Assembly (NCBI RefSeq): GCF_026571515.1
Contig: NW_026865709.1
Location: forward strand, 62,001 to 126,000
Reading direction: 5' to 3'
DNA from: Ruditapes philippinarum
Lineage: Eukaryota
Length of the DNA stretch: 64,000 nt
Shown here piece by piece: positions 16,884 through 62,547 of this stretch. The notes beneath the pieces were generated by a model that saw nothing but the letters and a program-made list of their open reading frames with translations, had not been told where the DNA came from and ran no database searches. Both the position numbers and the translations under genes were made by a program. The stretch's first letter is position 1; every line of letters starts with the position of its first letter.

Positions 16884-19800
16884 ATGGCCGAGTCTATGTC
16901 ACAGGATATCAGTACAAATACTCGGTTATTTTTAGCCGCCATAGATTTAGGTACGACATACAGTGGCTGGGCATATTCTACTCGTAATGAGCCTAACAAG
17001 GTACATGCAAATCAAGTATGGTTCGCTGGCAGTGCTTCTCTAGGATCGCTTAAAACACCATCATGTGTTCTCCTTACACCAAACAAAGAGTTTAAAAGTT
17101 TTGGTTATGAAGCAGAAACAATGTTTGCAACACTCGCAGAAAAGAAACAACATAGCGGATGGTTTTTCTTCCAAAGATTTAAAATGGCATTGTTTGATGA
17201 CCGAGTAAGTTAAATATTATTGTATAAAGGTTCATTTAATTGTTTAATATGTAAGGGTCATATGATTCAAAATATATCTGTATAAATATATCATATAAGT
17301 CGAAATAATTGTGTACTTATAATATGGGTTTTACTGTTATAGTATAAAGACCATGTAAGTCAAAACGTAATTGTTTACAAAGCATTTGAATTATAAATGT
17401 ATACATATTACATAAATAAAGAAATGTGGATCATACAAATTATACCTGTGTATACATCATGAAGTTACGGTGGCACAAAGGTGACATGTGTGTATTTTTA
17501 TTTATCTCGTGGCCACAAGATACTATGTCGTGGCCACGAGTTACTAAGTCGTGGCCACGAGATAGCTAAGTCGTGGCCACGAGATACTAAATCGTGGGAA
17601 CGAGATAGCTAAGTCGAGGCCACGAGATAATTAACTAATCAGAATACACTATATATATTATGAATTTTTTAAACTTAACAACTTACTTTTACATGCAACA
17701 TTAACCTTTGAAAATACTAAAGATATTCACTTTGAATATGTCTTTAGGATCATATTAGAAAGTCACATTCCAAGGCCCATCAGACATTAATTTTGACTAT
17801 AGCTCTTTGTTTTGTGATCGATTGGTGGTTTGTTTCGTATTACGGCCGACTAACTAACACGTGAAGATAACTGTTTTTTAGTAACCTCGTGGCCACGAAA
17901 TTTAAGATACTCCTTGTCCACGACAAAAAGTAAACTTGTTTTTTAGCCAACTTAGCAGGAGATATAACTAAAATTCACACACGTCACCTTTGTGCCACCG
18001 TATGAAGTCAAAACGTCAAATACCGATTATGTAAATTAAATGACCTTTGATGATTGTATAAGTCACATTATCATTGTTAATGAAAGATCATACACATATT
18101 GGTATTGGCTATGGTTAATGGAATTCAAAAAATCATTGTAAGTGAATCAAGTGAGTCAAAATGTAATAACATAATTATGCGTAATAATTTATTATGTTTG
18201 AATATGTTCCTAATAAACGCATAAACATCTAATATTGTGATGACAGTGCATGTATACATGCTTATTGTAGACGGGAAGAATGTCAAATATTAATGATATA
18301 TCTTTTTCTATTGTACTGATATGATACATACTATATATGAATATTTTATTGTGTAACAAATGAGATAAGTATCTTACACTATTTGCTGTAATACCATTTA
18401 TTATAATTATAGAAACTGACCCGTTTTACAACAATTGAAGATGTATCAGGAAAGAAAATGCCAGCATTGGTAATATTTGCTCATGCTATAAGATATCTGA
18501 AGGAAAGTTTTATGGCAACTGTTCGAAATAGAGTCACCAACGTGAAGGACACAGATGTAAATTACGTCTTGACAGTTCCAGCCATTTGGAATGACATGGC
18601 TAAAACTTTTATGCGAGAAGCCGCTAAACAGGTATTGTTGTTGAATGATGGACAAGTAGCTATAGATGATAGTTCTATGGTCAAAAAAACTTTGAAATGA
18701 TGTACGGTGTAATTCTATGCGTACACAATTGCAATATTACTTGTTTAATACATTATTAGCAAATTCTAACATTCAAATATTATCTAATATCATAATATTT
18801 AAATAATTGTTTATATTTAATGTCAGGATCATTTTATGAGTCAACAACGTTTACAATTTTAGGAGTTTTGTGTGTGTGTGTTTTGTGGGGTTGTTTGTTG
18901 TTGTTGTTTGTGTTATTTTTTTAACAAACGTTTATCATCACAGGCTGGTATACCTAATAATCAACTAACAATAGCACTCGAACCTGAGGCTGCATCCATC
19001 TGGTGCCAAGGAATTCACACAGAGGTTCGCCGTGAACTCGATAATGCCATACTTGGTATTTCTTCCGTTGGTACTAGATACATGATTGTTGATTTAGGAG
19101 GTAGATTTTTATACAATTAATGATTAATTAAACATTATAGACATACAATAAAGTAACTGCTAAATTCTCACAGAAATGAAGTACACAGATGGATTTGTGT
19201 AAATGATTGGTGATACAAGACTAGTGCTGAACATGCACAGTTCATTTGTCGTTAAAATATATAGTAATTTATATGAATAAATGAGTTGGTATTTCGGCGA
19301 TAATAACTAATTTAAAACTGTGAATTTGTCGTGAAAATATATAGTAATTTATATTAATAAATGAGTTGGTATTTCGGCGATAATAACTAATTTAAAACTG
19401 TGAATTTAAAACTGTCTATTTCTGTGAATAAAAAGGAGACAATTTGGTGAAAAAAGAGCAATTTATTTTTTTCATCTTTAATGTATATAAGAAAAGCGCA
19501 ATAAGGAAACATATTCAATCAAGTCTGCAATATTTTCGCTATACCATGTTTACCAAGCTTACTGATTCTTTTTTTTTCTTTGCTAGGGGCTTTAACGTAA
19601 GAAAGTGCAAAACTTTTGAAAAACCACTAGCAGTAAATGTGTAATTATTTTCAGGTGGAACGGCAGATATAACCGTACATGAAAAAAGACCAAACAACAC
19701 TCTTTTAGAGATACATAGACCTACCGGTGGTGCTTGGGGAGGAACTGAGGTGGACAAGAATTTCATTCAACTCCTTGAAAATATATTGGGTCCGCACCTT

Positions 19801-20700
19801 TGGAAAAAATATGAACAAAAGGAAGTTGAAGATATACTAGAAATAAACAGAGATTTTGAAACGAAGAAAAGAAATATAAGGACAATCAATGAAAGACATA
19901 TTACCATCAAAGCCCCTTCAAGCCTTAAAGAAGCTTATGAACAAAGTGGTAAAAGGTCTCTTTCAGATGTGGAAGTTCAATTTGATAAAAAGATTGAATG
20001 GAAAAGAGATAAATTAAAAATCGATTCGGCAATCTTGACGAGATGTTTCGAGGAACCCATAAATAAAGTCATTTTACACATTAAAAGCATTTTGTCAGAA
20101 AAAGACATGATAAATGTTACCAAAATCATGCTTGTCGGTGGCTTTGCCGAAAGTCCTTTCGTACAGGAGACGTTTAGAAATACCTTTGTTGATAAGCAGA
20201 TTATTATCCCACCAGAATGCGGATTGGCCGTTCTGAAGGGAGCTGTTCTGTTTGGACAAAATCCATGTATAGTTACATCAAGAATTGCTCGCTATACATA
20301 TGGTCTTGAAATTGCTGCTCCATTTAATCAAACCAAGCATTCTTGTAAAAAATTAGTAAATACAGATGCCGGGCCATTATGCCGGGATTTGTTTTGGAAG
20401 GCAGTAGGCATTGGTCAAGAAATTGTGAATGGGCATGAAGTGTCAAGAATCGGAAAAGCTGTTGATGATTACCAGCCAAAAATTGTCCTTAAAGTTGTAA
20501 AATCAAAGCAACAAGATCCGATATACACTACTGATAGGGACTGTGAAGTAATTGGACAAGTTGAAGTTCCAATGGATTGTACGTTAAAGGCTGATGAGAA
20601 TGCCGTTGATGAAATATTTATATTTGGTGGGACAGAACTCATATTAAAAACCCGCCACAGGAAAACAGGCTCAATACAAACACTCAGTTTTGATCTTTAA
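16884..20700 (+). CDS. HSPA12A: Heat shock 70 kDa protein 12A-like (atypical Hsp70, HSPA12 family), about 580 aa
   Basis: Exons 16884-17204, 18413-18631, 18944-19100 and 19655-20700 with GT-AG introns, 1743 nt in frame. Hsp70 NBD motifs in HSPA12 form: AAIDLGTTYSGWAYS, KTPSCVLL, FFFQRFKMAL, VLTVPAIW, ALEPEAAS, IVDLGGGTADI, GGAWGGTEVD, LVGGFAES, GLAVLKGAVLFG. No C-terminal EEVD. The A versus B subtype cannot be resolved by eye. Confidence 0.95.
17466..18002. mobile_element. IS3EU-type MITE (copy c) in the first coding intron of HSPA12
   Basis: TIR TACGGTGGCACAAAGGTGAC / GTCACCTTTGTGCCACCGTA; exact 6-bp TSD TGAAGT (17460-17465 and 18003-18008); 21-22-bp repeats CTAAGTCGTGGCCACGAGATA. Confidence 0.9.
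19245..19413. repeat. 80-bp tandem duplication in HSPA12 intron 3
   Basis: TTTGTCGT.AAAATATATAGTAATTTATAT.AATAAATGAGTTGGTATTTCGGCGATAATAACTAATTTAAAACTGTGAA occurs at 19245 and again at 19325. Confidence 0.85.
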
Positions 20701-21064
20701 TTTCTCTCAAACAAGTGTTATGTTATTAACGTTGCATTTAACTTAAAATTAAGTTGTATTTGAATGGCTACACCATTTGAAAAATGGGTTTATTTACATA
20801 GAAGTATTACAATCAATGCAAATTTTGTTAAATAGCTATAACAAGACAACAACCTTCCGGTGTTGCTTTTTTAACATACTAACTATACACTTTACGTGGT
20901 TTAGTTTTGAAATAGTGAACAAGTTTCAGTATTTATCAAAATAATCATTGCGTTTATTGATTTTATGATTCTCTACATTTCAATCATAGACATTAATTGC
21001 TATCAAGTATTACATTTATGTTGGTTTGCCCACGATCTAATTTTGTTTCGTTTTATTGTCTTGA

Positions 21065-22320
21065 TTTATTATACTTCGTCGAAAAGGCGGCGGTGATGTA
21101 GAAATAGTCTCCGTCCGTCTTTCCTTTCGTCCTTCCGTCCGTCCGTCCCACATTTTTTCCGGAGTATATCTCAAAATGTATTAACTTGAAACTTCATAGG
21201 TGGATAGATCATATTGAAGAGGTGTGCAGAGCGCAAGAATGATAACTCTACCCTCATAATTTTTGAGTTATTGCCCTTTGTTATTTTTCATACTTAATTT
21301 TTCACCTGAGTGGAGCATAACTCAAAAATGTCTTCCGTCCGTCCAACATTTTGTCCGGAGTATATCTCAAAATGTATTAACTTGAAACTTCATAGATGGA
21401 TAGATCTTATTAAGGAGGAATGCTGTGCGCAAGAATGATAACTCTATCCTTTATAATTTTTGAGTCATTGCCCTTTGTTATTTTCATTCTTTTTGTCCGG
21501 AGCTTATCTTAAAATGTGTATGAGGTATCAACTTGAAACTTCATAGGTGGGTAGATCTCATTGAGGAGGAGTGCATCACTCAAGAATGATAACCTTCTGT
21601 ATTATTTTTCAGTTATTGCCCTTTGATATTCTTCATACTTATTCTTTTGTCTAGAGCACAACTAAAAAAGCCTTTGAGATATCAACATGAAACTTCATAT
21701 ATGGATAAATCTCACTCAGGAGGTGTGCAGAGCATAAAAATGATAACTCTACCTTTCATAATTTTTGAGTTATTGACCTTTGTTATTTTTAATACTTATT
21801 TTTTCTTGAGTGGAGCATAACTCAAAAGTCTTTGAGATGTCAACGTGAAACGTCATAGGTGGATAGATCTTATAGAGGAGGAATGCTGTACACAAGAATG
21901 ATAACTCTACCCTTCATAATGTTTTAGTTATTGCCCATTATTATTTTTCATGCTAATTTTTGTCCAGACAGTAACTCATTTAGTATTTACTATATAAGGT
22001 ATTCACTTGAACCTCAAAATATAACTTAGTACCCGTCCGTCCGAACTTGAAACTTCATAGGTGGATGGATCTCATTGAAGAGGAGTGCAGCACTCAAGAA
22101 TGATAACCTACTCTGCATTATTTTTCAGTTATTGCTCTTTGTTATTTTCAGTCATCAGTATTCATATACGTCTCAAATCAGTAATCACTTCAGCCATCAG
22201 TTTTTAATACCAAAAGACCTCTTAAAATTGAATTATTCTGCTCTACTTCATATACATTCTTCCAATGAGCAAACACATTCGGCGGGAGATGGCCATGTTA
22301 ACATGGATCAAGTTATATTT
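21065..22320 (+). mobile_element. Helentron/HINE-type element with central ~150-190-bp tandem repeats
   Basis: T-rich start, (GTCC)n microsatellite at 21108-21148, about six diverged repeats containing AACTTGAAACTTCATAGGTGGATAGATC...CAAGAATGATAAC, and a 3' end with TTCGGCGGGAG plus the palindrome CCATGTTAACATGG. Confidence 0.8.
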
Positions 22321-23444: not shown

Positions 23445-23554
23445 GAACCTTCAATGCAACACGCGAGTGTCATTCCTTGAAAAGCGGTGCAAGGTCCCTT
23501 AGGTACTTTAAAAGAATGTGTGTGGCCTGAACGAAAAAACAATGGGCGGAACTA
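23445..23554. repeat. Dispersed repeat fragment (possibly SINE-derived); inverted copy at 61771-61874
   Basis: GAACCTTCAATG...AAGGTCCC...AAAACAATGGGCGGAACTA matches the reverse complement of TAGTTCCGCCCATTGTTTT...GGGACCTT...CATTGAAGGTTC. Confidence 0.6.
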
Positions 23555-24461: not shown

Positions 24462-27400
24462 CTATGTATCGTTATTTGTTTTGCTAAACTCAGTGTTTAC
24501 CAAATCAAATCCAATTGGAATGTGACTTGCTTTTCTAAAGACACTAAATCTTTTGGCTGTATTAAAATGACTTTGACCTGGTATGTTTGCAAAATAGAAC
24601 CCTCCAGATTCATCTTTTTGTGAGTTTCTGTCAATGTTCATTTTCCTTGAATCATTATTCCTTTCACTTTTGCTCAACCGTGAGACATTATCATCTTTAG
24701 ATTTATCAAACTGCATTTGCTGATTGTCGGATTTTCTTCCGTAGCCCTGTGCTACACCTTTCACCAAAACTGGTCCATTTTTATACAAGAGTAGGGCCGG
24801 CCACACAATGTAATCAACAAATGTACCACTGGTGGTATAAGGCTTCAATAAGTTTGTATCAAAGTTACATCCTCTTCTTAACTCATCAGCAAATACAATT
24901 GGCGGGTCTTGTATCTATGTAAAAAATATTTTCGTATATTTTCAGCTAATTTGACCATTTTCATATCATATTTGTAGGGATGAATACGTTAAATAAATCA
25001 ATAAAAGTAAATTTCTGTTGTCAAAATATAAATATTATCTGTTTTATCACTAACGTGTTACATAAAGTTTTATAGTAATGTAATAATAACAAACCGCCAT
25101 TAGCCAGCATAACTCAATACATTCTTTAGTAAACAAACCAATTTCCAACGCTTTATTTAGGACTCGATCTTCAGAATCTTTAATATGCGAGATATACATC
25201 TACAAAAAAGAAATATGTCATAACATTTACAAAGTGATACAACGGTTCAATAAAAACACCATTATTTGATCATTAATAAGATTTTAATACATTTTAGCGC
25301 GAACTTAACAAAAACGTAGCACTCAGGAAGCAAAGTTTAAAATTTATAAAAAAATATGTATATTCATATCATATTATTTCTGTATAATTAACAATATTCA
25401 GTTTACAGTGATTTCTTAGTGATATTATCAATGATTACCTCATACAAATTCCTCATGGCGTACGATGATAATGCTTTTCTACAGTCTTTTAAAGATTTTG
25501 GTGAATCATTTGAACACTTTCTGTGTACCTGGTCAAAATTGAACAAAAATATTTTAAATTGAATGAGATAAAACAATCTGAAGAGTATTATCAGTGACAA
25601 ATTACACTTGTATCATATAAATCAATTAACTTATTAAATATATTTATATTATATATAAAGACAACATAGAGATTGTAAACTGTGTTGGCTGTTTAATTTC
25701 TGTAACATACTCGTATATCAATTAAAATGATGGTTACAGTTTGAGCACAAATTATGAACCCAGTAACAGTTCAAGCAAATATTATAAATCCACAGTTTGA
25801 ACACATATTATGAACCCAGTAACAGTTTGAGCACATATTATAAATCCACTGTTTAAGCACATATTATGAACCCAGTATCAGTTTGAGCACATATTATGAG
25901 CCGAGTAACAGTTCGAGCACATATTATAAATCCACAGTTTGAACAAATATTATGAACCCAGTAACAGTTTGAGCACATATTATAAATTCACAGTTTCAAC
26001 ACATATTATAAACCTAGTAACAGTTCGAGCACATATTATAAACCCAGTAACAGTTCGAGTATATATTATAAACCAAGTAACAGTTCAAGCAATTATTATA
26101 AATCCAGTAACAATTGAAACACATACTATAAACCCAGTAACAGTTCGAGCACATACTATAAACCCAGTAACAGTTCGAGCACATATAATAAACCCAGTTA
26201 CAGTTCAAGCAAATATTATAAATCCACTAACAGTTTGAACACATAATTTAAACCCAGTAACAGTTTGAACACATACTATAAACCAAGTAACAGTTCCAAC
26301 ACATACTATAAACCCAGCACCAGTTTGAACACAAATATTAAACCCAGTAACAGTTCGAGCACATACTATAAACCCAGTAACAGTTCGAGCACATACTATA
26401 AACCAAGTAACAGTTCGAGCACATACATAAACCAAGTAACAGTTCGAGCACATACATAAACCAAGTTACAGTTCGAGCACATACTATAAAGCCAGTAACA
26501 GTTCGAGCACATATTATAAATCCAGTAACGGTTCGAGCACATAGTATCAACCCAGTAAAAGTTCAAACACATATTATAAACCCAGTTACAGTTCGAGCAC
26601 ATATTATAAACCCAGTAACAGTTCGAACACATATTATAAACCCAGTAACAATTAGAACACATACTATAAATCCCGTAACAGTTCGAGCACATATTATAAA
26701 CCCAGTAACAGTTCAAGCACATATTATAAACCCAGTAACAGTTCGAGCACATATTATAAACCCAGTAACAATTGGAGCACTTATTATAAACCCAGTTACT
26801 GTTTGAACATATTATAAGCCGAGTAACGGTTTGAGCACATATTATAAACCCAGTAACAGTTCAAGCAAATATTAAAAACCAAATAACAGTCCGAGCATTA
26901 TTATAAGTCCAGTAACAGTTTCAACACATATCATAACCCAGTTACAGTTCGAGAACAAATTATAAACCCAGTAACATTTTGAGCACATATTAGGAACAGA
27001 ATTACAGTTCGAGTTGTAGTTTGAGCATATATTATAAAGCCGTTAACAGTTCAAGCACATATTACAAACCCAATAACTGTTCGTACACATATTATAAGTC
27101 CACTAACAGTTTGAGCTCAAATTATAAACTCAGGAACTGTTCCAACACATATTATAAAACCAGTAACACTTCGTGCATATATTATAAACCCAGTAACATT
27201 TCAAGGTCTTGTTATAAACCCAGTAATAGTTCAAGCACATATTATAAACCCCGTAACAGTTCCAACACATATTATAACACCAGTAACACTTCGTGCACAT
27301 ATTATAAACCAAGTAACAGTTCCAACACATGCCATAAACCCAGTAAAAGTTCAAGGTCATGTTATAAACCCAGTAACAGTTCAAACAAATATTATTAACC

Positions 27401-30400
27401 AAATAATCGAGCACACATTATAACAGTTTGCACACATATTATAACCCCAGAAACTGTTTGAGCATATATTATAAACCTAGTAACAGTTTGAGCACATATT
27501 ATATATCCAGTAACAGTTTGGGCGCATATTATAACCCCAGTAACTGTTTGAGCATATATTACAAACCTAGTTAACAGTTTGAGCACATATTATGACCCAG
27601 TAACTGTTTGAGCATATATTATAAACCTAGTAACAGTTTGAGCACATATTATAAACCCAGTAACAGTTTGAGCACATATTATAAACCCAGTAACAGTTCG
27701 AACACAAAGTATAACCCAGTAACTGCTTTGAGCATATATTATAAACCTAGTAACAGTTTGAGCACATATTATAAACCCAGTAACAGTTCGAACACATATT
27801 ATAACACCAGGTAACTGTGTGAGCATATATTATAAACCTATAACAGTTTGAGCACATAGTATAGCCCTAGTAACTGTTTGAGCATATATTATAAACCTAG
27901 TAACAGTTTGAGCACAATATATTATAATCCAGTAACAGTTTGAGCACATATTATACACCCAGTAACAGTTCGAACACATAGTATAACCCCAGTAAACTGT
28001 TTGAGCATATTTTTATAAACCTAGTAACAGTTTTGAGCACATATTATATATCCAGTAACAGTTTGGGCGCATATTTATAACCCCAGTAACTGTTTGAGCA
28101 TATATTAACAAACCTAGTAACAGTTAACACGAGCAATATTGCACGCGTAATGCCTGTGTGAGGTTGTAAATACCTATTTTCCGTATTTACTTGAATAAAA
28201 CCATTACAATCGTATTACAGCAATATTAGATATTTGTAAGACAATGTGGTCATTTCGATTAAACGGTAAAATTATCTTAAACGTTACGACTGAAAATTCG
28301 AAAACTAATCCGTTTAAACGTATGTACCTGTAGGCCCTATTCCACAACAATAAATTATACGTTGGTGTATAAATATTTTGAGCTATCTGTAATACTGCTA
28401 ATTTACCTGTTTGTATGACAGTTCGAACGCACATTGTAATTGCTGCATCTGTTCCTGTTCTTTGAATTGGCAGAATGTCATGCTATCCTACGTTTAAATT
28501 GAAACGGTCTATTACAATCTTTACCACATTATTTTCTTTTTCGGCAATCGAATATAAAATAAAAATTATCGGCACTCTACAAATCACTCCAATCACTTTT
28601 CTATTTTCATTGATAACAAACACGTTATCCTTATTACATCTCGTGTACATTAGAAGTAATATACTTTTGTTCATTAATAACAATAAACTTGTGTTGGTAA
28701 AACCCCTAACAGAGCAATAAGTCAATATATTATAAAAGCATGTGTAGGTAATTAATTAACGTTCTTCATACTGAATTTAATATATCCATAGAACTTTTGT
28801 TTATAATTAAAAAAAACACACATCAATCATTGTTCTATGTTTCGGTAAATATTTTTAACGTTTATATCTTAAATATCATAAAATAACAATATAGCATACC
28901 TGAAGTATATATAAAAGGATGTCTATTGTTTTTGTCTCTGAATGACAATATTTATATATGCATTCAAACGCATCTGTCCATTGATTATCATAAAGCTCTG
29001 TAAATCTTTCGGCGAGTTTTGTTGGCCGATTTCTATCACTCAAATCGGCAATATTTGGATTGTTGTCTGTCAGCCGTACCCCCATTGCTTTACTTAGCCT
29101 TTACCCCATGAATAAATAAATGAAATGGTTATATACTTAATATTAACATAGAGTAAACCATATATTTTAATATAAATAAAGTCGACATAATATTAAAAGT
29201 AAATTACATATACAATATGGTTGTTGTGTTTACCTGGTTTTTGTTTCTTCTAGTTCAATCTCTGTATCATGAAGTTTTGAAAGTGTGTGCTGTAACACCT
29301 CATTTAATCTACACATTTCTTTGTTTACTTTATGCCTTTGGACGGTATATATATTTCTAGTCGATTTTGTCCCGTTTAACTTTTCGGTTAACTCTTGTAT
29401 TGTCCGCCCACGTTGAAATAAATTTTTCTCAGTATGTTTCAATTTCTTTTCTAGTGAAAAAATTATTTCATTACTTTCTTTTTCAAAATCTTTCAATCGT
29501 TTAGCGTCGGCTCTTATTTGAAGTCTCAGTTCACTCAGCATTTCGTCGGACTTGCTTAATTCGTTGTTACTGATAGGATGTTTCCGATTATAGCAATACT
29601 CTTGTGATACATTTTTAAATTTGTCCCTTTCTTTTCGCAAACGATTGTTTTCTATATTGCTTTGTTCCAAACGCTTTTTAAGCAGGGTATTTTCGTGTTC
29701 TAGTTTACTTAATTGTTGTTTAATATGTTCAACCTGTTATAGAGACCAAAATAAATTTTATTGATACATTTTATGTGGCTTTTTTATGTTTTATATTTTA
29801 CTAGAATAGCTTGATAACAACACACAAAGAAGTTAAAGTTATTAATGTTTCTTTAAAAGGAAATTATAATAAATTTATTAAAATATGTAAACATATCTTG
29901 CAATTTTACAAACCTGGGTACTTAAAGATTTTCGAACTTAATACAAAATGAATTTAATTGAGGAAAAAAAATGCATATTAAGGAAATAAGTTAAATTGTC
30001 ATAAAGTCGAATCGTCATAAAGTCAAATTGTGATTAAGTCAGATCGTCATAAAGTCGAATCGTCATAAAAAGTCAAATAGTCATAATATCAGTTCGTGAT
30101 AAAGTTAAATCGTCATAAAGTCGAATCGTGGTAAAGTCAAATCGTGATTAAGTCAGATCGGTTTAACCCTGTGCTTCTTGCTTTATCCATTTTTAACGTA
30201 ATTTACATTTATATAGATCTTATGTAATCTAAGAAAATTATTTATTACTGAGAACGCACGTATACTATTTATGATTTTCAAAACTTCAATTTCACAAAAT
30301 TGACCATGATGTAAAGAGACTGTTGAAAGATGCTTACACGATACTTTTCATTTTGACATTGTTCACGCACTTTGTTTGAAAGTACATCTATATGTTTGAA

Positions 30401-36806: not shown

Positions 36807-39800
36807 TTACCATCCGTAAAAGTTTTGTGTATGATCCTTTCGTAAACATCTTAAATATGCTGCGTTACCGAGGACATCTCTAGCACCAGTATGATCATGG
36901 TGGTCAATATAGCGATAATAAAGTCTCATCTCTTCTGGAGTAGGATCTCTCTCATATCCACATGATGGCGTCCAAACATTTGTTGTTCCTCTTCTTGTTG
37001 TTGCTTTTGTTTTAATAACTGCCATTGGATATGCAGTCTTCGTCTCTTCAGTGATGTTAAACGCATGCAAAGGTTGTGTCTTCATTCTGTCCTTCGAGAT
37101 ATAATAGTGTCTGTCGCTGATGTCTAATTGTTCTTGAATATAAGGATTTTTACTCCTGATGATCTCTTTATGTGACAGAGTATCCCTGTTTTCATCATCT
37201 AAATCATATTTCCTGTCATATTCTATATCAGATTTACCAGCCTGGTATGTTATTGTATCTTTTACGCTAACTCTAACTCTATTTGAGCTGTCTGCTATTT
37301 TGGTTTCTGTACTTAAACTTCTCTTTTCGAGGTTAAGTTCCTTTTGTAAGACGTCGTCATCTCTTTCATATAATACAGATGTATCGGACAATCTCCAGTT
37401 ATCTGTTCTTCTCGGATGCTCTTTTTTGTCTAAAAGGAAATCATTTCTTTCTCTCAGATATGAATCGTTCGGGTTGAGCAAAGACCTTTCGTTGGGTTGA
37501 TCTCTCAACGGGATGTTGTTATTTGTGTATTGATCGAATCGTTCTACTTTATCTCTTCCATGTGAGCCAGATGTATTTTTTCCAGACATTTGATAAGAAC
37601 TATCCCGATCGGTCGGTTCAATGTCGGTATTAACATGTTGCTCTATGTCAATCTCCGTGTTGAATCTCAGACTTTCCGGTTGTCTGCTCACACATTTATC
37701 ATCCGCTTCAGCAACGCCCTTTGCAAAAATTGAGCCATTTGAGGTATATTGCAAAGCAGGCCATACCACATACTTTATATATGGTCCAGAATTGTTATAA
37801 GGGTTGTAAATGTCTAAATCGAATTCATCTCCATCCTGTGTTAAAGGCCTGAATTCTAACGGATCATCTTGGATCTAAAAATGTTTTAAATAATTTACTT
37901 TTTGAATATTTTAACCATGTTAAACACGTTAAAAGGCGAGCAACTTAATGGTTTTATTACTATTTTAATCAAATACAATATACTTAAAATTATATTGTGG
38001 ATTATATAAGAAATATGATAGCGTGTGAATATTAAACATAGTATTAGACTTAAAGATAGATTATTTTTGATTAATTATAGTGATTGATTTGACATAGTTT
38101 ACATCAATCATTTAATAATTTGTTAATTGTGGGTTTCTCATGACCTCATCATTAAAAACATTTCTCTGATAAATATTTGATCAGTGAAGATTATTTCTTT
38201 GTAATAGCATTGTATTTTTGAACACTTACAGCAAGAAGCCAGCAAAACTCAAAGCATTCTTTTATAAATGGTTCAATTTTGACATCATAATCAGCTGGGT
38301 GTCTTGGTTTCTTCCGGAAACTTGCCGGATACAGCTGAAATGAAATAATAACGTAAAGTTATCTGTGTGTATTACCTCCTTTTACACATCACTTTCTACA
38401 ATCGAATATTTTAAAAAATGGAATGTAAATGTTTATTCCTTTCATCTGTTACAAATTTATGAAAATGTTTAAAATCATATTTACCTCAAATAGATGTGTA
38501 TCTGCTTCTGGTGATACTTCTCTCATGCAGTATTTCAAATGTTTGGTAACATTTCCTGAGATATCTCCGTCTTTCTAGCAATAAGTGTATGCAATGAAAA
38601 TTAGTTAATTAATTGTCTATCGACCAGGACACATGATATATATTCTTAACCAAAAATTATACCTTTCGCTAAATCTGATGTAAGATATTTTTCACGATTT
38701 AATACATTTGTCTGAAATTTCAGGGTTTTTTTCTGTAAACGAACGTCAACTGAATCTGTCCAGTTCGACATATTGGACAGAAAATATCAGTTTGATTGTT
38801 TGATTTGAATAAGAATAAGAATGATTCCAAACATGATAATCTGACAATAATCGGTAGCATGACCGCCTTGTGGAATGCTTACTGTCGCATTGAGAGAACA
38901 TGCTTATCAATGTCAGTCTGTTTGATGATTTTCCATTCTTCATCTTCATCTTAACACAATGCAAACCTTGACTTATCAGTAAAAAGAATGTTTTGTCAAT
39001 GCTATGTGTTCAAGAGCCCGCTACTTTTTTGTAAATCGTCAACAAGTCTCCAGCATGTCTGTGGCCCTTTAGCGTAAATTGTCCGAAATTCTTGGCATTG
39101 GAATTTCTGATTTCTTAATATATTTGATTATCTTACAATAGGTTTACGACTATATCAATAAAATGGTATATACACCTATCTACCACGTGGACCGGATGTG
39201 CCCTTTTCTTCGGTTTTCAAAATTACTACATGTGCATATGTGTTTACATCATAAAGGTAACATTTTGTACGAGCTATACGGAAGTTTCTTTTTTTTCTTT
39301 AGTATATAACCATAATCACAAGCATACTCATGTTTCTTGAGGCATACTTTTAAACATTTTTGCCATCTCTAACCCTTTAAAATTTTGTTTATAAAATATT
39401 TTCTTGAACATATTACTTTGCATATATGTATGCTTCATTGAATAAAAACACGGTTACCTATAATTTTATAAAGAAGATTTTTAAAAAACAATGTAAACTT
39501 ACATGTTCAGAAGAAAATGTCAAGATCTTGAAAATATCTTTTATTTGGTCATTTGCGTTCCTCTTGCAGAAGTCCATTATATCCTGGCAATTGATAAAGC
39601 AGAAAAAAGCAGTATGTAAGTTTATATGTGAATCGATCAGATGACAATGGTAATATACCCGAAGATTCCAATACAATGGCGAAGCTTTGTCGTCACATAC
39701 ATTGTAATATCTATTATGTAAATGTTTAACATTTCTTTTTAATAACATACCCTTTTCGTTTTAATGAAAAAACTGTACCAATACATAACTATTACTAACG

Positions 39801-48679: not shown

Positions 48680-48914
48680 ATAGTATGTATTTCGACAAAT
48701 ATTCAAAAGAACAAAAACAAAAAAACAATAAATCCATGAAATATCCGCAGATATGTTTGTTGATAAAAGAGTTAAATATTTTTTTTCAATTCATATATAT
48801 GCACATAAAAAACAGAAAAATAAATGACAGCAAATGTTATCGTTTCTGGTGAATGAGAATCAAAGTTTATTAAGAACGGGAAGAGTCAATGTCAATCATT
48901 CTGACATGTATAAT

Positions 48915-55011: not shown

Positions 55012-58000
55012 CTAAGTGTCAAGACTTAGTGTAGATGTTAATGTCGTCTCTTTATGGTACATAGATTTTGCTTGCCTCTTACCTGTCTGGCTACCATCCT
55101 TTTTTCTTAACTGAAACAATTTATATTTCTTACATTGCACAACACCTTTGCAAAGAAGTGGCCCATCCTTTTCTAAAAAGACAGCAGGCCACACAACGAA
55201 CTCTACATATGGACCAGACTCTATATATTCTTTGAAAGTATTTCCATCAAATATTTGGTCTGTTTTGCAGTTTTCAAGCGTTAGATATAATGGTGGGTCT
55301 TGTATTGCCATCAACCAGCATAATTCGAGACATTGCTGTACAAAAGGTTTGAATGCTTCGGATTCCAACAATGAGGATGGAAGGTGTTTGATCTTTCTTG
55401 ATAGAGTAACTTTGTATTCCTGTATAATTATATACATATATATGACAAAAAAGTTTCAAGGTCCGATAAACATTTTGTAAAATTTGCCAATATGTAATTT
55501 GCATTGCTTTATTTCATTCAAATACATCGGGGAAGTCGAAAACATTTGTATTTTCTCGCAAAACAACTAGGAAACAGAATTAAAAATTGAAGAATTGGTG
55601 AAATTGAGACAATATGCCATCATTTAAGTACCCGACTTAAGATAAAATGAACCATGAATGAATCTTTACTGAAGACAATTAAATATCATTGAAGTACTTT
55701 TACCTAATTTAACATAAAAGAACCTGTACTAAAGTCAATAGGCTATCATAAAAGTACCTTTACTAAACGCAATAAGCTATCATAAAAAGCCTGTACTACG
55801 TACAAAATGCTATCGTTAAAGTACCTTTACTAAAGAAAATATACTATCATAAAAATACTTTTCCTAAAGACATAAACCATCATGAAAGTACCTGTTAAAA
55901 TACAATAAACTGTTATAAAAGTACTTACCAGAACACAATAAGCGATCATAAATATACATATTCTAAAGATAGTATTATCAAACTAAAGTCAATATGCTAT
56001 TTTAAAGTACCTTTTCTAAGTCCATGCTTGGTTGTGGAACTTTTTTCCTCTGATCTTTTAATTGCTTTATGAGATCTCGTACTTTCTCTCTATTATGCGA
56101 ACTTTTCTGAAAATAACTCTTAAAATTTTGAAATGTTATTTTATGTTTACATCTTTTATGTAATAAAGTCATGTTTATATGCTTTTGATTAAATTGATGA
56201 CTATACAAAATCGTTTTAATTTTTTATACAGAAAAGTAAATTCTGACTGAATTATATAGTGATGAAGGAGTATTTGCAAAGAGGGAAGAAATCGATTTAC
56301 CCCGTAGAAATCTTCAAGTACTTTACGAATTGTATCTAGTTGTTTCGTGGCAGTTTCTGTCGATAGTGTGAATGCTTCCTAGATGAAAACAGAAACAAAC
56401 AGACATTTTCCTAGTTCAAATAAAAATTTATAAAAGTGTGATCAGGTTTAGTATAAAGAATACCATCGTCAATTTAGTGCGTGTTGTAATTTGACGTACA
56501 CGACTATAATGATTTTAAGTGAGAATACTATAAAGTTCCTAAGTTTAACAATATGTAAATGACCTTTGCCAAACCATAAAAATATATATAAAGATAAATA
56601 GTTAAGATAATAGTTTTGAAGCACCTGATGCTAGTTTATTTTATGAAAAATGCTTAGATAAATTTCGTTTTTTATTTCATTCTTAATCATGTATATCAAA
56701 CAGACAATGAATATGATTTTTGATTATGAAAATATTTTTTAATGATTGTTATAAACGTCATGTATGTAAAGGAGACGTAACAAGTAAATGAATAGATAAT
56801 AATATTTTCATTTTCAAGTACGGGCATACTTTTTCAGAACTTCAAATAAAAAAGCATGACTAAACTTATATAGAAGAAAACGTCGAAATAAGATTTTCTT
56901 TAGGGTATCCTTACACCGGGCGCATTTTGTTTAATATATTGGGTACCCAAAGAGGATATTTAATGTGTATATTACCTTTCTGGCGAGGTTATATCAATTA
57001 ATTTCGTCGATCAATATCCAATCAAAAAGGGGGAAATCTGTATAAATTATTACTTTTTTCCATTATACTTATTAGGTCAGACACTTTTACATGTATTATA
57101 GAAAAAGATTTTACAATCATATATTTGTTTATGTTTTTTTTATATATATATAAAGTGTAAGCATACAACAAGAATAGCCAGTAATGTATCTATGATGCGT
57201 TTTTCTACCGCATCTTTAAAGACATCAACAGTTTGTAGGTATGCGAAGGCATCCGTCCATTGGTTATCGTATAAGTCTGCATACTTTTCAGCAAGTTTGG
57301 TTGGTCTATTCTGGTCACTAAGATCTGCTATGTTAGCATTATTATCAGTTAGTCGTACACCTGTCATTTCACGTAATCTGAAATTATCGTTATATAGCAA
57401 TGTATGCTTCGTTAAAAACTAATTGTTTTTCCATGCAGTACAATATCATTATGCAGAATATTTGAAGAATCTTGAAACGCATGCTAATTCATAAAATCAT
57501 TTCAACTTCATGCAAGATTCACCCTATCAAGAAAACACACACACAAACACACACACGCACGCACGCACACACAAGCACAAAAACAACTAGGATTAATAAA
57601 GTTAATATTATTAATATTGTAGAAGACAATCATTATCCCGAGAGAAATATAAGGCAAAGCTTTCCATTTGCAAACATTTGATTAGCTAAAAACAATATAA
57701 TTATGTCATAATTTTTTAAATATTGCCTTCCTTCCAAAGTTTTATTGCATCTGTCCTGTGTTTGTTTGACTTCCTCCTCCAGTTCGTTATTTGTCCTAAC
57801 AAATACAAAGCAATTGACATATAGTTAAGTTTCTTTATTTAATAAAGCATTGCTGTCGATACCCGAGTTTGTTTACATGATATAAAAGGAATATAAAGAT
57901 ACCAAAGATGTGGTCGACTGGATGTATGATTGTTTGATACGGCAATGCTTAGATACATTAAACATAAAATTCTCTGATAAAATGGTATGAATATTGATTT

Positions 58001-61000
58001 GAAAACAAACATTATGTTTAAATAATATATATAATTAACTATTTTCAAATATGCCTTTTATGTCAAGTTCTTTTTTAAAGAAACTTGTTTGCATGATTTT
58101 AATGTAACCCATACTCTGCGAGCTGTTGTATCTTATCATTTCCTTTTCGAAGTTGATCTTTCAGCTGTTGCAATTCTTTGTTCTTTTCTTCAGTTTCTGC
58201 TTTAAGCTTGTCAAACTGGGTCCTTAAACAATACAAAGAGCTTATTACGAATCATGTCAAATTCAATTATAACGCAAAAATTATATCGATATTAGAATAC
58301 ACCTTTCAAAAACGACAGTTAGATAATAGTTAATTATGTTACATTTAAACTTACTTAAGTTGACAACGTTCCAGTTTCAAACGATTTCTTTCGGGTCTCG
58401 CAGGGTAGTTTCCAGCCATGTCAAATTCGATTGTTTTTATTTTCCTGCAATAATGTATTTTGATTGTTACAAACGGTTCTAATGTTCTTTTATTATAAGG
58501 AATTACTATTGTGACATTAGGAAATGCTTAGATACATTATACATAAAATTATCTGCCCAAATAGTATGAATATTGATTAAAACAAACATTATGCTTAAAT
58601 ATAGTATATTATTAACTATTTTCAAATATGCCTTTTATGTCAAGTTCTTTTTTAAAGAAACTTTTTTGCATGATTTTAATGTATCCCATACTTTTCGAGC
58701 TGTTTCATCTTATCATTTCTTTCTTTAAGTTGATATTTCAGCTGTTGCAATTCTTTGTTCTGTTCTTCATTTTCTGCTTTAAGTTTGTCAAACTGGGTCC
58801 TTAAACAATAGAAATCGCTTATTCAGAGTCAAGTCAAATCCAAATATAATGCAAAGAATAAATCGATTTTCGAATACACTTATCAATTCAAGTCCTTAAC
58901 AATACAGTAAGATTATAGCAATTATATTACATTTAAACTTACTTACTTAAATTGATAAAGTTTCTGTTTCAAATTATTTCTTTTGGATTTTACAGGGAAT
59001 TTTTTATCGATGTCAAGTCCCCTTGTCTTAATGTTCCTATAATAATGTATTTTATTGTTACAAACGGTTGCATAGTTTTGTCACTTTTTTTCCTCATTTT
59101 CTGTTATAAGGCATTACTATTGTGACCTTAAGAAATGTTTAGATACATTGAACATAAAATTCTCTTACGAAATAGTCTGCATATTGATTTAAAGGAACGT
59201 TATGTTTAAATATAGTACATGCATATAATAAGCCATTAATTTTACATGATTTACATCCAATTTTTCTATGCGTGTTTTTACGTTCTGAACTTATTTTCTG
59301 TGCGTGAAGTTTGATATTTATGCGTAAATCATACACATAATTGCTTGTGCGTGAAAGGGAACACTTATTTTTATCAAAACATCGGACAATGTTTTATATC
59401 ATATAACTAAGCTCTAGCTATCTCCATTTCGGAAAAAGAATAAAAAATCACCAGATTGGAGTTTATTTAGACCCCAGGGGCATAATTTGAATAATATTTG
59501 TAGTTGTCTAAAATGTTTCATGCAAAATATCTTGGTACTAGCCTTAGAAGCTTCCAAGAGGTCTTCTTGTTTGAAGTCAAAACCTAGGCTTTAGCCTGTT
59601 AAGAAAATCTATGTTTCCAAAGGGCAGATCCAATTTGACCCAAGGTTTATAAATTTAGAATGCTTGGTTTAAATGTCGACGGCATTTTTGTACATATTTA
59701 TAAAATACAGCTATAAGCACTTTTTTCATGTTAAACTGATAAATCCTGTGCTTAACAAGATCTGGAAAAGACCCATTTTTTGTGTGTGGATGCTAGTAAT
59801 TTACCATTTAAGACATTAAAATTGGCAATATGTTTCGTTCCTGTTTTGTTTCATGGTAAAGCTTTATAAATACGAGTAGAATATCCAATGTCTTTATAAT
59901 ATAATATGTAATTCTTCCAGAAGGATGATACAGTCTAAATACAGTAAGCCTGGATTGTTATTTTACTTGGCATACCTTAATTGTTTGTAGCATGTCCTTG
60001 TTTTTCGTAACTAAGGTTAGTTGCCAAAATGATTTTATTTTGTTTTAAAAAACTTATGCTGATAAAATCGTATTCGAACGTTTATAAGTATTTGCATATA
60101 TACTCAACACGCATTACACATTCTGCACATCTCTGAATTTGGAAGGTATTACCCTTATTTCAAACTAGGCCATATAGTCAAAATAAAAATTAAAAAACTT
60201 TCATGCACAGAAACACAAAAAGTCACAATTTCACAATAATGAAAATTAAAACCTAGGGTAACAGTATGGTTAAGTACTTTGTATTAAATTACATTTATTT
60301 AATATAAATGATAAAAAAATTGAATAAGACAATAAAACGAAAACCAATTACCCAATGCTTCAAAGTAAAAATTGAATTAAAATATATCGTACCTGTCCTG
60401 TAAAGCATCTGTTTTTGCTAAGATCGTTTTGTATTTGTCAGCAGCCTTTTCTTCTTTAAGAATGTTTTGCAAGTGCTCTAAATTTCTTCTCGCCATTTCT
60501 TCACCTTGGATCTTTTCTTTTTCAATAGTTTTACATGTAATTTCCAATTCTTTTATTCTTGCTTGGTGGCATTGATTTTCTTTTGAATATTGATTGACTT
60601 GGATCTTTAACTGCATTATTTCTGCCTGTTTTGACACAAGATCTTTTTCAACTTTCATTTTTTTCATGTTCTCATAATCTAACCTGAAAATAGTCCACCT
60701 CATACTTCAGGTTCACATTCTTCAATAAAAAAAATTGAACAGATAAATAGTATCACCTTCGGGAGCAATGAAATCAACAACACTATCTCACACATACACA
60801 GTCTTGTCAAATGCGATCGAAATAACATTCACTGTAAGATATAAATCATTTCAAAGAACCCTTGTATGCAACTAAGAATATCAAATATAAGATTAAAGTT
60901 AAGCACAGCATGCAATTTATGATAAAATTCTTTGAATCCATTTTCACCTGAAATAACCAATTTTACTAACTCCGTTTTGTTTTGCCAGGGTAGCTCTAAT

Positions 61001-62547
61001 AAAAACGTGTGCAAATAAATATTCTATCTAACAGTTGCTTTAACAGAATCACTATTAAAGTAGTAATCTAAAACATCAGTTACTTAAAATATAAAGACCT
61101 ACATCTATTGCACCTTGTAGAACAAGCATGCGCAGTGTTTAGGTTTAGGGGTTTTGTTTTCATAAAATTTATATTAATTAATATCTGAATATTATTTTGT
61201 ATTATCCATAATGATGTAATACTAAAAATAATTTTCTATATAATGATAAGGTCTAGATGAAAATGCCTTTATAAAGCGTTGAGGTTTTTTTTTTCATGTA
61301 TACGCACTAACTACATTATATATGCATATTATCCAGTCTGTATAAAATGCATTGAAAGTCTGTATTTTTACAGTAATTTCCCTTTTTAATGATTCATACG
61401 GAAAAATAATACTATTGCGCTTGGAACGTCTGATAGCATACATTACTTTCCCCTTCTAAAGTAAATATGACCGCTGGAATAAATAAGCTGGGAAGAAATA
61501 GAAAAGCAGAGAGATTTGTTCTGAATTTCAAAATATTTTTTTCAAAATTTCAACTTTAACCAATTTCGTTCGATTTTTTCTAACATTATTGACAGAACAG
61601 CGACACTGTTAATGCCATATGTCATTTTTCATTGTTAATGGCAAAGAAATATCTCATTAGGCGCCTCAGTGGAACCACCGATATTTCGTAAGCGAGAACG
61701 TTAACTGCCTGACATAAAAAAAGAATAAAGTTTCATAACCTCTGATCCCCTTTCAAAATTCCATTTTATTTAGTTCCGCCCATTGTTTTCTCGTTTAGCG
61801 CACACGCACTTTTTACTTGGGGACCTTATGCTGCTTTTCATGGAATTGCACTAACGTGTCACATTGAAGGTTCCATGATAAGAAAGCCTTATAAGAAAGT
61901 ATTGGGAAAAACAAATAAAATGGAATTTTGTAAAAAATAGGTAACAAGAACATTAAAAACAAACAAAAAATCAAGAATAGGTTTTTAACGTGGAAGTCGA
62001 CAGTCCGGACGAAAAAGGAGGAATTGCAACTGGTCGGTGAAAAACACTTTGCCTCGGTGGGGGCATTTGTACATAACGTAATCGGTGCGTTACAGGTTTC
62101 TGATTAATATGACGCTTATGATGGCAGCTATAAAACAAGATCCGTACTTAAAAAAAGTGTATATTTTTCTGGTCATTCTAGCTAAATCTTACTTATTTGT
62201 AAAAAGAAAAACCGCATAAACCTTCAATTCTTACAATGAAAAATATAACCCCTTACGTTAATTGCATCAATATTTTATAGGATCATTAAAATGGTAAATA
62301 AAAACCTATTAGAAGCTGATTTATTGCCAATTCCTACTATCTCATGGTTCTTCACAAACCGGTAATGAAGCTTGAAGCAAGTGCCACACATGTATCTACC
62401 ATAGACGCCACAATTAAAACAGAAGTACAATGCCGGTCTGGGTTCTCCATCGGCAACACAATGAAAGCATTTGTCTGTATCATCATCATTATCATTACCC
62501 CTAACTTCGTCACTTCCACATTCGTTTAAACTACTTGACATAGCCAT
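55012..62547 (-). CDS. B-box zinc finger + coiled-coil + Mieap-domain protein, 'gene 3', about 596 aa
   Basis: Exons 62547-62306 (CFHC..FCFNC..MCGTC..H..H B-box), 60683-60393, 59036-58947, 58799-58692, 58444-58355, 58222-58115, 57795-57727, 57377-57167, 56378-56301, 56106-56011 and 55419-55012; 1791 nt in frame if one GC-AG intron is accepted. Motifs RLTDNNANIADLSDQNRPTKLAEKYADLYDNQWTDAF, QCLELCWLMAIQDPP and FDGNTFKEYIESGPYVEFVVWPAVFLEKDGPLLCKGVVQ. Confidence 0.85.
55700..56020. repeat. Degenerate ~33-bp tandem repeat abutting and overlapping an exon donor site of gene 3
   Basis: CTATCATAAAAGTACCTTTACTAAAG-like units recur about 9 times; the last unit (AAAGTACCTTTTCTAAG, 56004-56020) contains the real donor of exon 56106-56011. 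Confidence 0.75.
57944..59215. repeat. Tandem duplication of a ~580-590-bp two-exon unit; homologous to 1-710
   Basis: Exon A at 58115 and 58692 (offset 577), exon B at 58355 and 58947 (offset 592); intron sequence such as AAATATGCCTTTTATGTCAAGTTCTTTTT is shared with about 300-330. Confidence 0.92.

What the first reader, a model, noticed from the sequence alone, without database searches (positions are those of the whole stretch)
16884..62547. HSPA12 embedded in an array of Mieap-domain genes whose C-terminus looks like a GrpE head: candidate linked Hsp70 / nucleotide-exchange-factor module
Seen in the sequence: an intact HSPA12-type Hsp70 lies head-to-head with gene 0 and tail-to-tail with gene 1, inside an array of three or four paralogues. 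Each complete paralogue has a long coiled coil, a helical segment, and then the pattern F-D-x(3)-h-x(2)-Y-x(2)-S-G-x-h-h-x-h-h-V-W-P-A-h-x(4)-[ND]-G-x-h-h-x-K-G-V. Examples: GCNFDTNLLKPYTTSGTFVDYIVWPALLLYKNGPVLVKGVAQ; GDEFDLDIYNPYNNSGPYIKYVVWPALQYTSNGSIFAKGVAE; DQIFDGNTFKEYIESGPYVEFVVWPAVFLEKDGPLLCKGVVQ. Established: GrpE, the nucleotide exchange factor of DnaK, has a long dimeric coiled coil, a helical bundle and a small beta head with consensus about G-x-x-F-D-P-x-x-H-x-A...G-x-V-x-x-V...G-Y-x-h-x-G-R-h-h-R-x-A-x-V, and grpE is commonly linked to dnaK. HSPA12 is strongly expanded in bivalves, and I know of no assigned exchange factor for it. Inference: the Mieap domain is a GrpE-like fold, and these genes encode partner or regulator subunits of the neighbouring HSPA12, forming a co-duplicating stress or immune module. 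The similarity was judged by eye only.
Basis: partly seen in the sequence, partly recalled or inferred. Interest (0 to 1): 0.9.

Follow-up and report, generated by a model that had tools for sequence, protein, structure and literature searches.

The report
GrpE-like MIEAP genes flank HSPA12
In a clam genome, an atypical Hsp70 gene (HSPA12) sits among four genes whose 'mitochondria-eating protein' domain is shaped like GrpE, the bacterial Hsp70 helper, and is predicted to dock on HSPA12 as GrpE docks on DnaK, which gives a testable partner for a chaperone whose mechanism is unknown.

Summary
The window (Ruditapes philippinarum, contig of 155,044 bp) carries an intact, spliced, expressed HSPA12 gene. 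It lies head-to-head with MIEAP gene 0 and tail-to-tail with gene 1, followed by genes 2 and 3.

One complex prediction passed (ipSAE 0.63; best control 0.00). It places the most conserved MIEAP residues on the HSPA12 positions equivalent to the published GrpE footprint on DnaK.

Linkage is real but partial: 5-6 of about 80 MIEAP contigs hold an HSPA12 gene. The closest HSPA12 paralogues have no MIEAP neighbour. The arrangement seems conserved in Mercenaria. 'Obligate co-duplicating module' is therefore not supported, and exchange activity is untested.

Two first-reader notes on other pieces of this genome describe the same head-to-head arrangement. No paper in the library searched links Mieap with GrpE or HSPA12.

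The parts
16884..20700 (+). HSPA12-type Hsp70 gene, 4 coding exons (16884-17204, 18413-18649, 18941-19102, 19654-20700). Product is P0313, 580 aa. The 3' UTR runs to about 21207.
   Evidence: tblastn of P0313 gives 100% identity in exons 1 and 4. Pfam HSP70 E 1e-13. Closest named relatives are HSPA12A/B-like proteins of clams. Spliced transcript contigs occur in runs X1 and X6.
30..11244 (-). Gene 0 (5' part only): coiled-coil + MIEAP protein P0273 ('titin homolog', 605 aa). Exons at 11244-11161, 9664-9491, 4566-4429, 467-360 and 122-30. The MIEAP domain (residues 341-539) is encoded left of the window.
   Evidence: The MIEAP exons lie at C14196:56808-57098 and 60123-60320.
24462..29541 (-). 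Gene 1: coiled-coil + MIEAP protein P0285 (411 aa). Exons include 29541-28900 (with an intron), 28487-28401, 25549-25421, 25199-25095 and 24914-24465.
   Evidence: tblastn. Pfam MIEAP residues 127-316, E 1.7e-17. The splice joint 24914/25095 is present in transcript contigs of two runs.
24741..24896 (-).
   Evidence: Placed by alignment to P0001 residues 170-222 of the AF2 model.
36807..42403 (-). Gene 2: MIEAP paralogue without a public model. Candidate exons at 42403-42188, 40904-40233, 40090-39842 (MIEAP N-terminal motif), 38358-38194 and 37874-36807. The last exon continues for about 300 codons past the domain.
   Evidence: ORFs, translation, custom HMM hits E 9e-18, 9e-7 and 6.5e-5. The gene model is inferred, not verified.
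37701..37856 (-). Gene 2: segment encoding the GrpE-like beta head.
55012..62547 (-). Gene 3: B-box-like exon (62547-62275), coiled-coil exons, and MIEAP domain exons at 57367-57167, 56378-56301, about 56121-56011 and 55422-55015. The MIEAP part is P0001 (260 aa).
55129..55287 (-). Gene 3: segment encoding the six-stranded GrpE-like beta head (P0001 residues 170-222).
   Evidence: AF2 models. VIA alignment of model residues 44-104 to GrpEL1 residues 160-219.
57167..57367 (-). Gene 3: exon with the conserved N-terminal MIEAP motif (DLSD.NRPTKLAE...LYDN.W). It forms half of the predicted HSPA12 interface. Equivalent exons are 28900-29100 (gene 1) and 39842-40090 (gene 2).

Best explanation
The locus is a cluster of one HSPA12-type Hsp70 gene and four coiled-coil + MIEAP-domain genes.

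Shown:
- The MIEAP domain folds as a helical bundle followed by a small six-stranded beta head.
- GrpE, the nucleotide-exchange factor of DnaK, is its nearest solved counterpart.

Predicted, not measured:
- The domain docks on the HSPA12 nucleotide-binding domain across lobes IB and IIB.
- It does so through its two most conserved elements, the N-terminal DLSD.NRPTKLAE helix and the Y..SG / GPLL.KGV part of the head.
- The contacted HSPA12 positions correspond to the GrpE footprint on DnaK.

Inferred mechanism:
- MIEAP-domain proteins, dimerised or scaffolded by their coiled coils, act as GrpE-like partners of HSPA12-type Hsp70s.
- They hold the cleft open and so speed or gate ADP/ATP exchange.
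- The two families have expanded together in bivalves.
- Some pairs, like this one, stay adjacent and often head-to-head, but adjacency is not obligatory.
For: Fold:
- The AF2 model of P0001 has pLDDT 87.6 and pTM 0.81, made without templates.
- Foldseek on that model: ranks 1-4, 6, 7 and 9 are GrpE.
- Model of the window's own last exon: Foldseek ranks 1-10 are all GrpE (E 0.024-0.31, prob up to 0.97), and the next family has E 2.2 and prob 0.07.

Binding:
- ipSAE was 0.61, 0.63 and 0.64 in three runs, against 0.00 in the best of 3 controls. The tool's mark was reached by 51 of 78 solved complexes and 2 of 108 mismatched pairs.
- The three runs agree in at least 75% of their contacts, and the partner pLDDT is at least 75.
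- Interface residues map to DnaK 26-30, 41-52, 258-270, 280-299 and 369-378.
- The published GrpE footprint on DnaK is residues 28-33, 51-61, 255-272 and 276-302 (PMC10825016).
- MIEAP interface residues are far more conserved than the rest of the domain (0.71 against 0.42, p 5e-8).

Context:
- Both families are greatly expanded here. MIEAP has at least 143-150 matches, and HSPA12 has at least 126 matches plus 17 intronless copies.
- MIEAP and HSPA12 lie within 25 kb on 5 contigs, against about 0.3-0.45 expected on a uniform genome.
- Three of these are MIEAP(-)/HSPA12(+) head-to-head.
- The Mercenaria orthologues of both lie on one chromosome, with accession numbers within 14 of each other.
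- Both genes are spliced and present at similar depth in the same two transcript runs.
Against: - All support is computational.
- There is no significant sequence or profile similarity to GrpE.
- The complex used the Mercenaria HSPA12 orthologue (74% identical; 22 of 32 interface residues identical), not the window's own protein.
- It was folded without alignments and with one MIEAP copy only.
- The tool warns that a pass can reflect likeness to a solved complex (DnaK-GrpE) rather than real binding.
- On the HSPA12 side, the interface is no more conserved than the rest of the protein (p 0.15).
- About 93% of MIEAP contigs show no HSPA12 gene.
- The closest HSPA12 paralogues lack MIEAP neighbours.
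- The unrelated C1q family also shares contigs with HSPA12 (3 of 105; Fisher p 0.05-0.2).
- No Hsp70-MIEAP fusion was seen in 16 long MIEAP proteins scanned or in 44 search hits.
- In the model the helical bundle is intramolecular, unlike GrpE's dimeric four-helix bundle.
- Human Mieap's structured C-terminal region is reported to act through cardiolipin and phospholipid binding and condensates, not Hsp70 (PMC10845071).
Confidence: 0.4

Rival explanations
1. The fold resemblance is real but has no bearing on HSPA12. These are ordinary members of a large bivalve expansion of Mieap-like scaffold proteins, with coiled coils and a lipid- or partner-binding C-terminal domain. They sit next to an HSPA12 gene only because both families have hundreds of tandemly arrayed copies.
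For: - Only 5-6 of about 78 MIEAP contigs hold an HSPA12 gene.
- The nearest HSPA12 paralogues have no MIEAP neighbours.
- The C1q control also co-occurs with HSPA12, and the difference is not significant.
- No fusions were found.
- Human Mieap is described as a condensate-forming, cardiolipin-binding protein.
- The Atlas's nearest look-alikes are plant GIL1/IRKI C-terminal domains, not GrpE.
Against: - The complex prediction passed with controls at 0.00, at a GrpE-type footprint.
- The MIEAP side of that interface is built from the domain's most conserved residues.
- The same head-to-head arrangement recurs at three deeply diverged loci.
- The arrangement is probably conserved in Mercenaria.
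- Adjacency exceeds the uniform expectation about tenfold.
Confidence: 0.35
2. MIEAP domains do bind Hsp70-type nucleotide-binding domains, but not as exchange factors of the neighbouring HSPA12. They might serve another Hsp70, such as a canonical cytosolic or mitochondrial one. They might instead act as inhibitors or adaptors that lock or recruit the ATPase, for example to condensates or mitochondria.
For: - The fold and predicted footprint say where the domain binds, not what binding does.
- According to the tool, a pass does not tell which member of a family binds.
- Accessory parts fit adaptors: coiled coils, a B-box (P0052 E 1.7e-7; gene 3 exon E 0.004) and the MGCRNS start of gene 0.
Against: - No other Hsp70 was tested here.
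- The genomic adjacency and co-expansion concern HSPA12 specifically.
Confidence: 0.15
3. The GrpE likeness is an artefact of modelling or of generic 'helices then small beta sheet' geometry, and the complex score follows from it.
For: - Both sides of the complex are predicted models.
Against: - No templates were used, and confidence is high (pLDDT 87.6 and 83.5).
- Two models and two independent aligners all put GrpE first among 48,161 to 350,542 chains. There is a sharp gap to the next family.
- The Atlas's own model of the same protein has pTM 0.76.
Confidence: 0.05

Closest known systems
GrpE / GrpEL1 (Pfam PF01025; solved with DnaK or mortalin in 1DKG, 4ANI, 8GB3, 9BLS)
   Same: - The order of parts is the same: long coiled coil, helical bundle, then a small beta head at the C-terminus.
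- The predicted footprint on the Hsp70 nucleotide-binding domain matches the GrpE footprint: the loop equivalent to DnaK 28-33, lobe IB, and the lobe IIB helix and hairpin.
- It sometimes lies next to its Hsp70 gene.
   Different: - There is no detectable sequence or profile similarity.
- The helical bundle is intramolecular and larger (five helices) in the model.
- An extra conserved N-terminal motif has no GrpE counterpart.
- The proteins are metazoan and cytosolic-type, with B-box or lipidation-type N-termini. GrpE-like factors are described only from bacteria, mitochondria and chloroplasts (PMC12987570).
- The partner would be an Hsp70 without a canonical substrate-binding domain.
- Exchange activity is untested.
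Mieap / SPATA18 (Pfam MIEAP, PF16026)
   Same: All four genes carry the full domain above Pfam's cut-off, preceded by coiled coils as in Mieap.
   Different: - This is a family of about 170-200 copies in this clam, against one gene in mammals.
- The N-termini vary.
- None of the Mieap papers I read or found assigns a fold to the domain or links it to an Hsp70.
Plant GIL1 / IRKI C-terminal domain (Pfam PF24994, with DUF641)
   Same: These are the nearest clusters in the ESM Atlas, both by language-model features (0.78-0.80) and by predicted structure (TM 0.74-0.75 over about 102 residues of P0001 118-226).
   Different: - There is no sequence-level match in Pfam scans of 60 MIEAP proteins.
- Feature scores under 0.9 are leads only.
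- I know of no Hsp70 link for these plant proteins (from memory, not tested).
Other Hsp70 exchange factors (BAG, HspBP1/Sil1, Hsp110)
   Same: They would act on the same principle, binding lobes IB and IIB and opening the cleft (PMC10825016).
   Different: Their folds are unrelated, and none appeared among the structural matches.

Membership tests
MIEAP (PF16026) | Match to the Pfam model above its gathering score, over the full domain | tested here: met
   Gene 0 E 4.3e-24 (residues 341-539), gene 1 E 1.7e-17, gene 3 E 3.6e-22 with profile positions 1-194 of 195. Gene 2 was detected only exon by exon with a custom HMM.
HSPA12-type Hsp70 | Hsp70 nucleotide-binding domain without the canonical substrate-binding domain, with HSPA12A/B as closest named relatives | tested here: met
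   Pfam HSP70 covers profile positions 4-353 of 599 only. hhalign to the DnaK nucleotide-binding domain gives probability 98.6%. [quoted passage not shown]
GrpE (PF01025) | Sequence or profile match to the GrpE family | tested here: not met
   No GrpE hit in 60 MIEAP proteins at E <= 10. The profile search against PDB sequences found only coiled coils. hhalign against 13 GrpE sequences gave P 0.023 (full length) and 0.0042 (C-terminal halves), probability 2-8%.
GrpE (PF01025) | C-terminal beta head preceded by bundle helices (GrpE fold) | tested here: met
GrpE (PF01025) | Homodimer through a long N-terminal helix and an intermolecular four-helix bundle | not tested
   Upstream coiled coils are present. 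However, the monomer model shows an intramolecular bundle, and no dimer was modelled.
GrpE (PF01025) | Binds lobes IB and IIB of the Hsp70 nucleotide-binding domain | tested here: inconclusive
   Prediction only: ipSAE 0.63 against 0.00 in controls, with a footprint matching the GrpE footprint on DnaK. The pair was cross-species, and the result may reflect likeness to solved complexes.
GrpE (PF01025) | Accelerates ADP release from its Hsp70 | not testable with these tools
   This needs a biochemical assay.
GrpE (PF01025) | Gene commonly linked to its Hsp70 gene | tested here: inconclusive
   The two families lie within 25 kb on 5 contigs (about 0.3-0.45 expected on a uniform genome). The excess is not significant against a C1q control, and most copies are unlinked.

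The most novel reading that the evidence does not exclude
The MIEAP/SPATA18 domain is a very divergent GrpE homologue and the dedicated nucleotide-exchange partner of HSPA12-type Hsp70s throughout metazoans, humans included. On this reading, Mieap's mitochondrial quality-control and tumour-suppressor roles run through HSPA12A/B. The parallel expansion of both families in bivalves would then build a combinatorial chaperone and co-chaperone system for stress or immunity.
Probability: 0.25. Interest if true: 0.9.

Novelty: new variant of a known kind. Interest (0 to 1): 0.8.

Why it matters
A 2026 review calls the function of HSPA12 unknown and its bivalve expansion unexplained (PMC13580251). A 2025 review places GrpE-like exchange factors only in bacteria, mitochondria and chloroplasts (PMC12987570). 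The structured domain of Mieap/SPATA18, a p53 target, has no assigned fold in the Mieap papers I read.

If the MIEAP domain is a GrpE-like partner of HSPA12, three open points become testable with simple binding and ADP-release assays:
- what HSPA12 works with;
- what the Mieap domain does;
- why both families expanded together in bivalves.

It would also extend the GrpE type of co-chaperone to a metazoan, non-organellar setting.

Tried and rejected
Cross-species synteny could therefore only be inferred from accession numbers and chromosome lengths.
The other linked loci (C14781, C9370, C4942, C15439) and paralogue contig C5745 could not be read. Their arrangement rests on exon coordinates.
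- Global hhalign gave nothing.
- The profile search against PDB sequences gave only coiled-coil noise.
- The Pfam scan at E <= 10 gave no GrpE hit.
- Hsp70-MIEAP fusions: none among 16 long MIEAP proteins or 44 search hits.
- The obligate co-duplication reading was rejected, because the closest HSPA12 paralogues have no MIEAP exon nearby.
- Literature: no paper has both Mieap and HSPA12. The Mieap+GrpE and HSPA12A+SPATA18 co-mentions that I read are incidental.
- Spliced models were never joined or typed. Exons were searched by reference. Full-length work used public proteins that match the window's exons (P0313, P0273, P0285, P0001).
- The RNA check is weak as a co-expression test. It covers four runs that were chosen because they hold this stretch.

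Full report
**What is there**

The window is G000:C14196:62001-126000 of a 1.41-Gb assembly.

HSPA12 lies on the plus strand in four coding exons: 16884-17204, 18413-18649, 18941-19102 and 19654-20700. [quoted passage not shown] Pfam HSP70 matches only the nucleotide-binding part. hhalign to the E. coli DnaK nucleotide-binding domain gives probability 98.6%.

Four coiled-coil + MIEAP genes lie on the minus strand:
- Gene 0 is P0273 (605 aa). It starts at 11244 with MGCRNS, and its MIEAP exons are left of the window.
- Gene 1 is P0285 (411 aa), at 24465-29541.
- Gene 2 lies at 36807-42403. It has no public model.
- Gene 3 lies at 55012-62547. Its MIEAP part is P0001.

These assignments rest. 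Genes 0 and 3 are 84% identical in the domain. Gene 1 is about 40% identical to either.

Exons were searched by reference, and full-length work used the public proteins above.

**The motif**

They form the C-terminal third of Pfam MIEAP. In 60 family members G194, W202, P203, G211 and G217 are invariant. The domain is greatly expanded here: at least 143 six-frame matches of the C-terminal exon and 150 of the N-terminal exon. HSPA12 is also expanded, with at least 126 matches plus 17 intronless full-length copies.

**Is the domain GrpE-like?**

I built two template-free AF2 models. One is of P0001, the gene 3 domain (pLDDT 87.6, pTM 0.81). It shows helices at 22-163 followed by six strands at 170-222. 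The other is of the window's last exon of gene 3 (pLDDT 83.5).

| Model | Search | Result |
|---|---|---|
| Whole domain | Foldseek, PDB | No hit at E <= 0.001; ranks 1-4, 6, 7 and 9 are GrpE/GrpEL1 |
| Last exon | Foldseek, PDB | Ranks 1-10 are all GrpE (E 0.024-0.31; prob 0.97, 0.92, 0.91 for the best three). The next family has E 2.2, prob 0.07 |

At sequence level there is no proof of homology:
- No Pfam GrpE hit in 60 members at E <= 10.
- No GrpE in a profile search of PDB sequences.
- hhalign against 13 GrpE sequences (E. coli plus 12 diverse plasmid-borne ones) gives P 0.023, or 0.0042 for the C-terminal halves, with probability 2-8%.

My reading is that the fold likeness is well supported (about 0.85) and common descent remains open.

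**Does it bind HSPA12?**

The one complex job used the Mercenaria orthologue P0152. It is 74% identical to the window's P0313, and 22 of its 32 interface residues are identical. I had not yet found P0313 when the job was sent. The partner was P0001.

- ipSAE was 0.61, 0.63 and 0.64 in three runs. The best of three controls scored 0.00.
- The tool's mark was reached by 51 of 78 solved complexes and 2 of 108 mismatched pairs.
- The runs agree in at least 75% of their contacts, and the partner pLDDT is at least 75.

The interface on HSPA12 maps to DnaK residues 26-30, 41-52, 258-270, 280-299 and 369-378. The NMR-validated GrpE footprint on DnaK is 28-33, 51-61, 255-272 and the hairpin 276-302 (PMC10825016).

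On the MIEAP side the interface consists of the N-terminal conserved helix (residues 11-38) and the head (188-193, 207, 212-218). These residues are much more conserved than the rest of the domain (0.71 against 0.42, p 5e-8). The HSPA12 side shows no such excess (p 0.15).

Caveats:
- The pair was cross-species.
- Only one MIEAP copy was used, and no alignments were used.
- A pass may reflect likeness to the solved DnaK-GrpE complexes.
- A pass does not tell which paralogue binds.

**Linkage**

Within 25 kb, MIEAP and HSPA12 exons co-occur on C14196 (this locus), C14781, C9370, C4942 and C15439. On C3689 they lie 47 kb apart. A uniform genome would give about 0.3-0.45 such cases. On C14196, C14781 and C9370 the arrangement is the same: a minus-strand MIEAP array facing a plus-strand HSPA12.

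Several results argue against an obligate module:
- About 93% of MIEAP contigs show no HSPA12 gene.
- The 17 intronless HSPA12 copies share no contig with MIEAP.
- Five of the seven closest HSPA12 paralogues (52-57% identical, on four contigs) have no MIEAP exon within the roughly 10-34 kb available on either side. The HMM used does find all three genes in the window.
- An unrelated expanded family, C1q, shares 3 of 105 contigs with HSPA12. MIEAP shares 6 of 78. Fisher p is 0.13, or 0.05 for cases within 25 kb, and weaker without the ascertained locus.

All lists are lower bounds, because only the best candidates are scored.

In Mercenaria, four MIEAP orthologues (XP_053399679-85) and two HSPA12B-like orthologues (XP_053399692/3) lie on the same 97.8-Mb chromosome, with accession numbers within 14 of each other. 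The R. philippinarum genes of this contig carry XP_060571871-79.

**Expression**

In transcript-like contigs of runs X1 and X6, HSPA12 is spliced (exon 4 starts at 19653, 3' UTR to about 21207; depth 23 and 20). Gene 1 is also spliced (joint 24914/25095; depth 14 and 15). Both are near zero in two raw RNA runs. This is compatible with co-expression, but with four selected runs it is not a test.

**Wider picture**

- The ESM Atlas's nearest look-alikes of the C-terminal half are plant GIL1/IRKI C-terminal domains (PF24994; TM 0.74-0.75), then fungal and actinobacterial hypothetical proteins. GrpE is not among the 30 nearest predicted models.
- Some MIEAP proteins carry a B-box (P0052, E 1.7e-7). 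Gene 3's first exon is a weak B-box (E 0.004).
- No Hsp70-MIEAP fusion was seen.

**Literature**

- No paper in the library holds both Mieap and HSPA12. The co-mentions of Mieap with GrpE and of HSPA12A with SPATA18 that I read are incidental.
- Human Mieap's structured C-terminal region is discussed as a hydrophobic, cardiolipin-binding part of a condensate scaffold (PMC10845071).
- The function of HSPA12 is called unknown (PMC13580251).
- GrpE-like factors are placed in bacteria, mitochondria and chloroplasts (PMC12987570).

**Verdict**

The 'co-duplicating module' holds only as occasional, possibly ancient and partly conserved adjacency. Exchange activity is untested.

Two first-reader notes on other pieces of this genome (s1-811300, s1-803759) describe the same head-to-head arrangement. 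This agrees with the coordinates I found, but it is not independent evidence.

Noticed in passing
P0001 residues 118-226 (window 55117-55443, minus strand): The ESM Atlas's nearest look-alikes, by features and by predicted structure, are plant GIL1/IRKI C-terminal domains (PF24994, TM 0.74-0.75), Mucoromycota hypothetical proteins and a 247-aa actinobacterial cluster (TM 0.64). The MIEAP C-terminal fold may belong to a wider, unrecognised superfamily.
   Followed up: no
window 21133-22434: A repeat lies between the 3' ends of HSPA12 and gene 1 (tandem units of 158-196 bp). Depth in RNA runs is very high (up to about 15,000 word depth, about 900 reads), with many back-joints and loose ends. It looks like a high-copy transcribed mobile or satellite element.
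   Followed up: no
window 1364-3841, 4638-5592, 12592-14156, 25736-28125, 44029-44591, 48910-50595: Long minisatellite arrays (periods 22-52 bp, 19-54 copies) lie in the introns and spacers of the cluster. They create the long spurious ORFs in the ORF list.
   Followed up: partly
window 62275-62547 (minus strand): The first coding exon of gene 3 looks like a B-box zinc finger (Pfam zf-B_box E 0.004, below cut-off). A related protein, P0052, has a clear B-box + MIEAP architecture (E 1.7e-7). Part of the family is therefore TRIM-like without a RING.
   Followed up: partly
window 36807-37700 (minus strand): In gene 2 the reading frame continues for about 300 codons after the MIEAP domain, into a charged, low-complexity tail with no Pfam match. 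Whether all of it is coding is unverified.
   Followed up: no
Translation confirms the residues, but the lipidation itself was not tested.
   Followed up: partly
G000:C2644:199166-428865: A very large array of at least 18 MIEAP N-terminal exons lies on one contig, on both strands. No HSPA12 match was seen on that contig.
   Followed up: no
G000: C14597, C8208, C12800, C11239, C14556, C664, C314, C8230, C6295, C15728, C4696, C8921, C13130, C14022: Seventeen HSPA12 copies are single open frames of 576-853 aa covering the whole protein. They are intronless and possibly retrocopies. The window's gene has four exons.
   Followed up: no
window 58114-58804 (minus strand): A coiled-coil segment of gene 0's protein (P0273 residues 123-158 and 187-222) matches twice in gene 3, at about 58120-58224 and 58691-58804.
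   Followed up: partly
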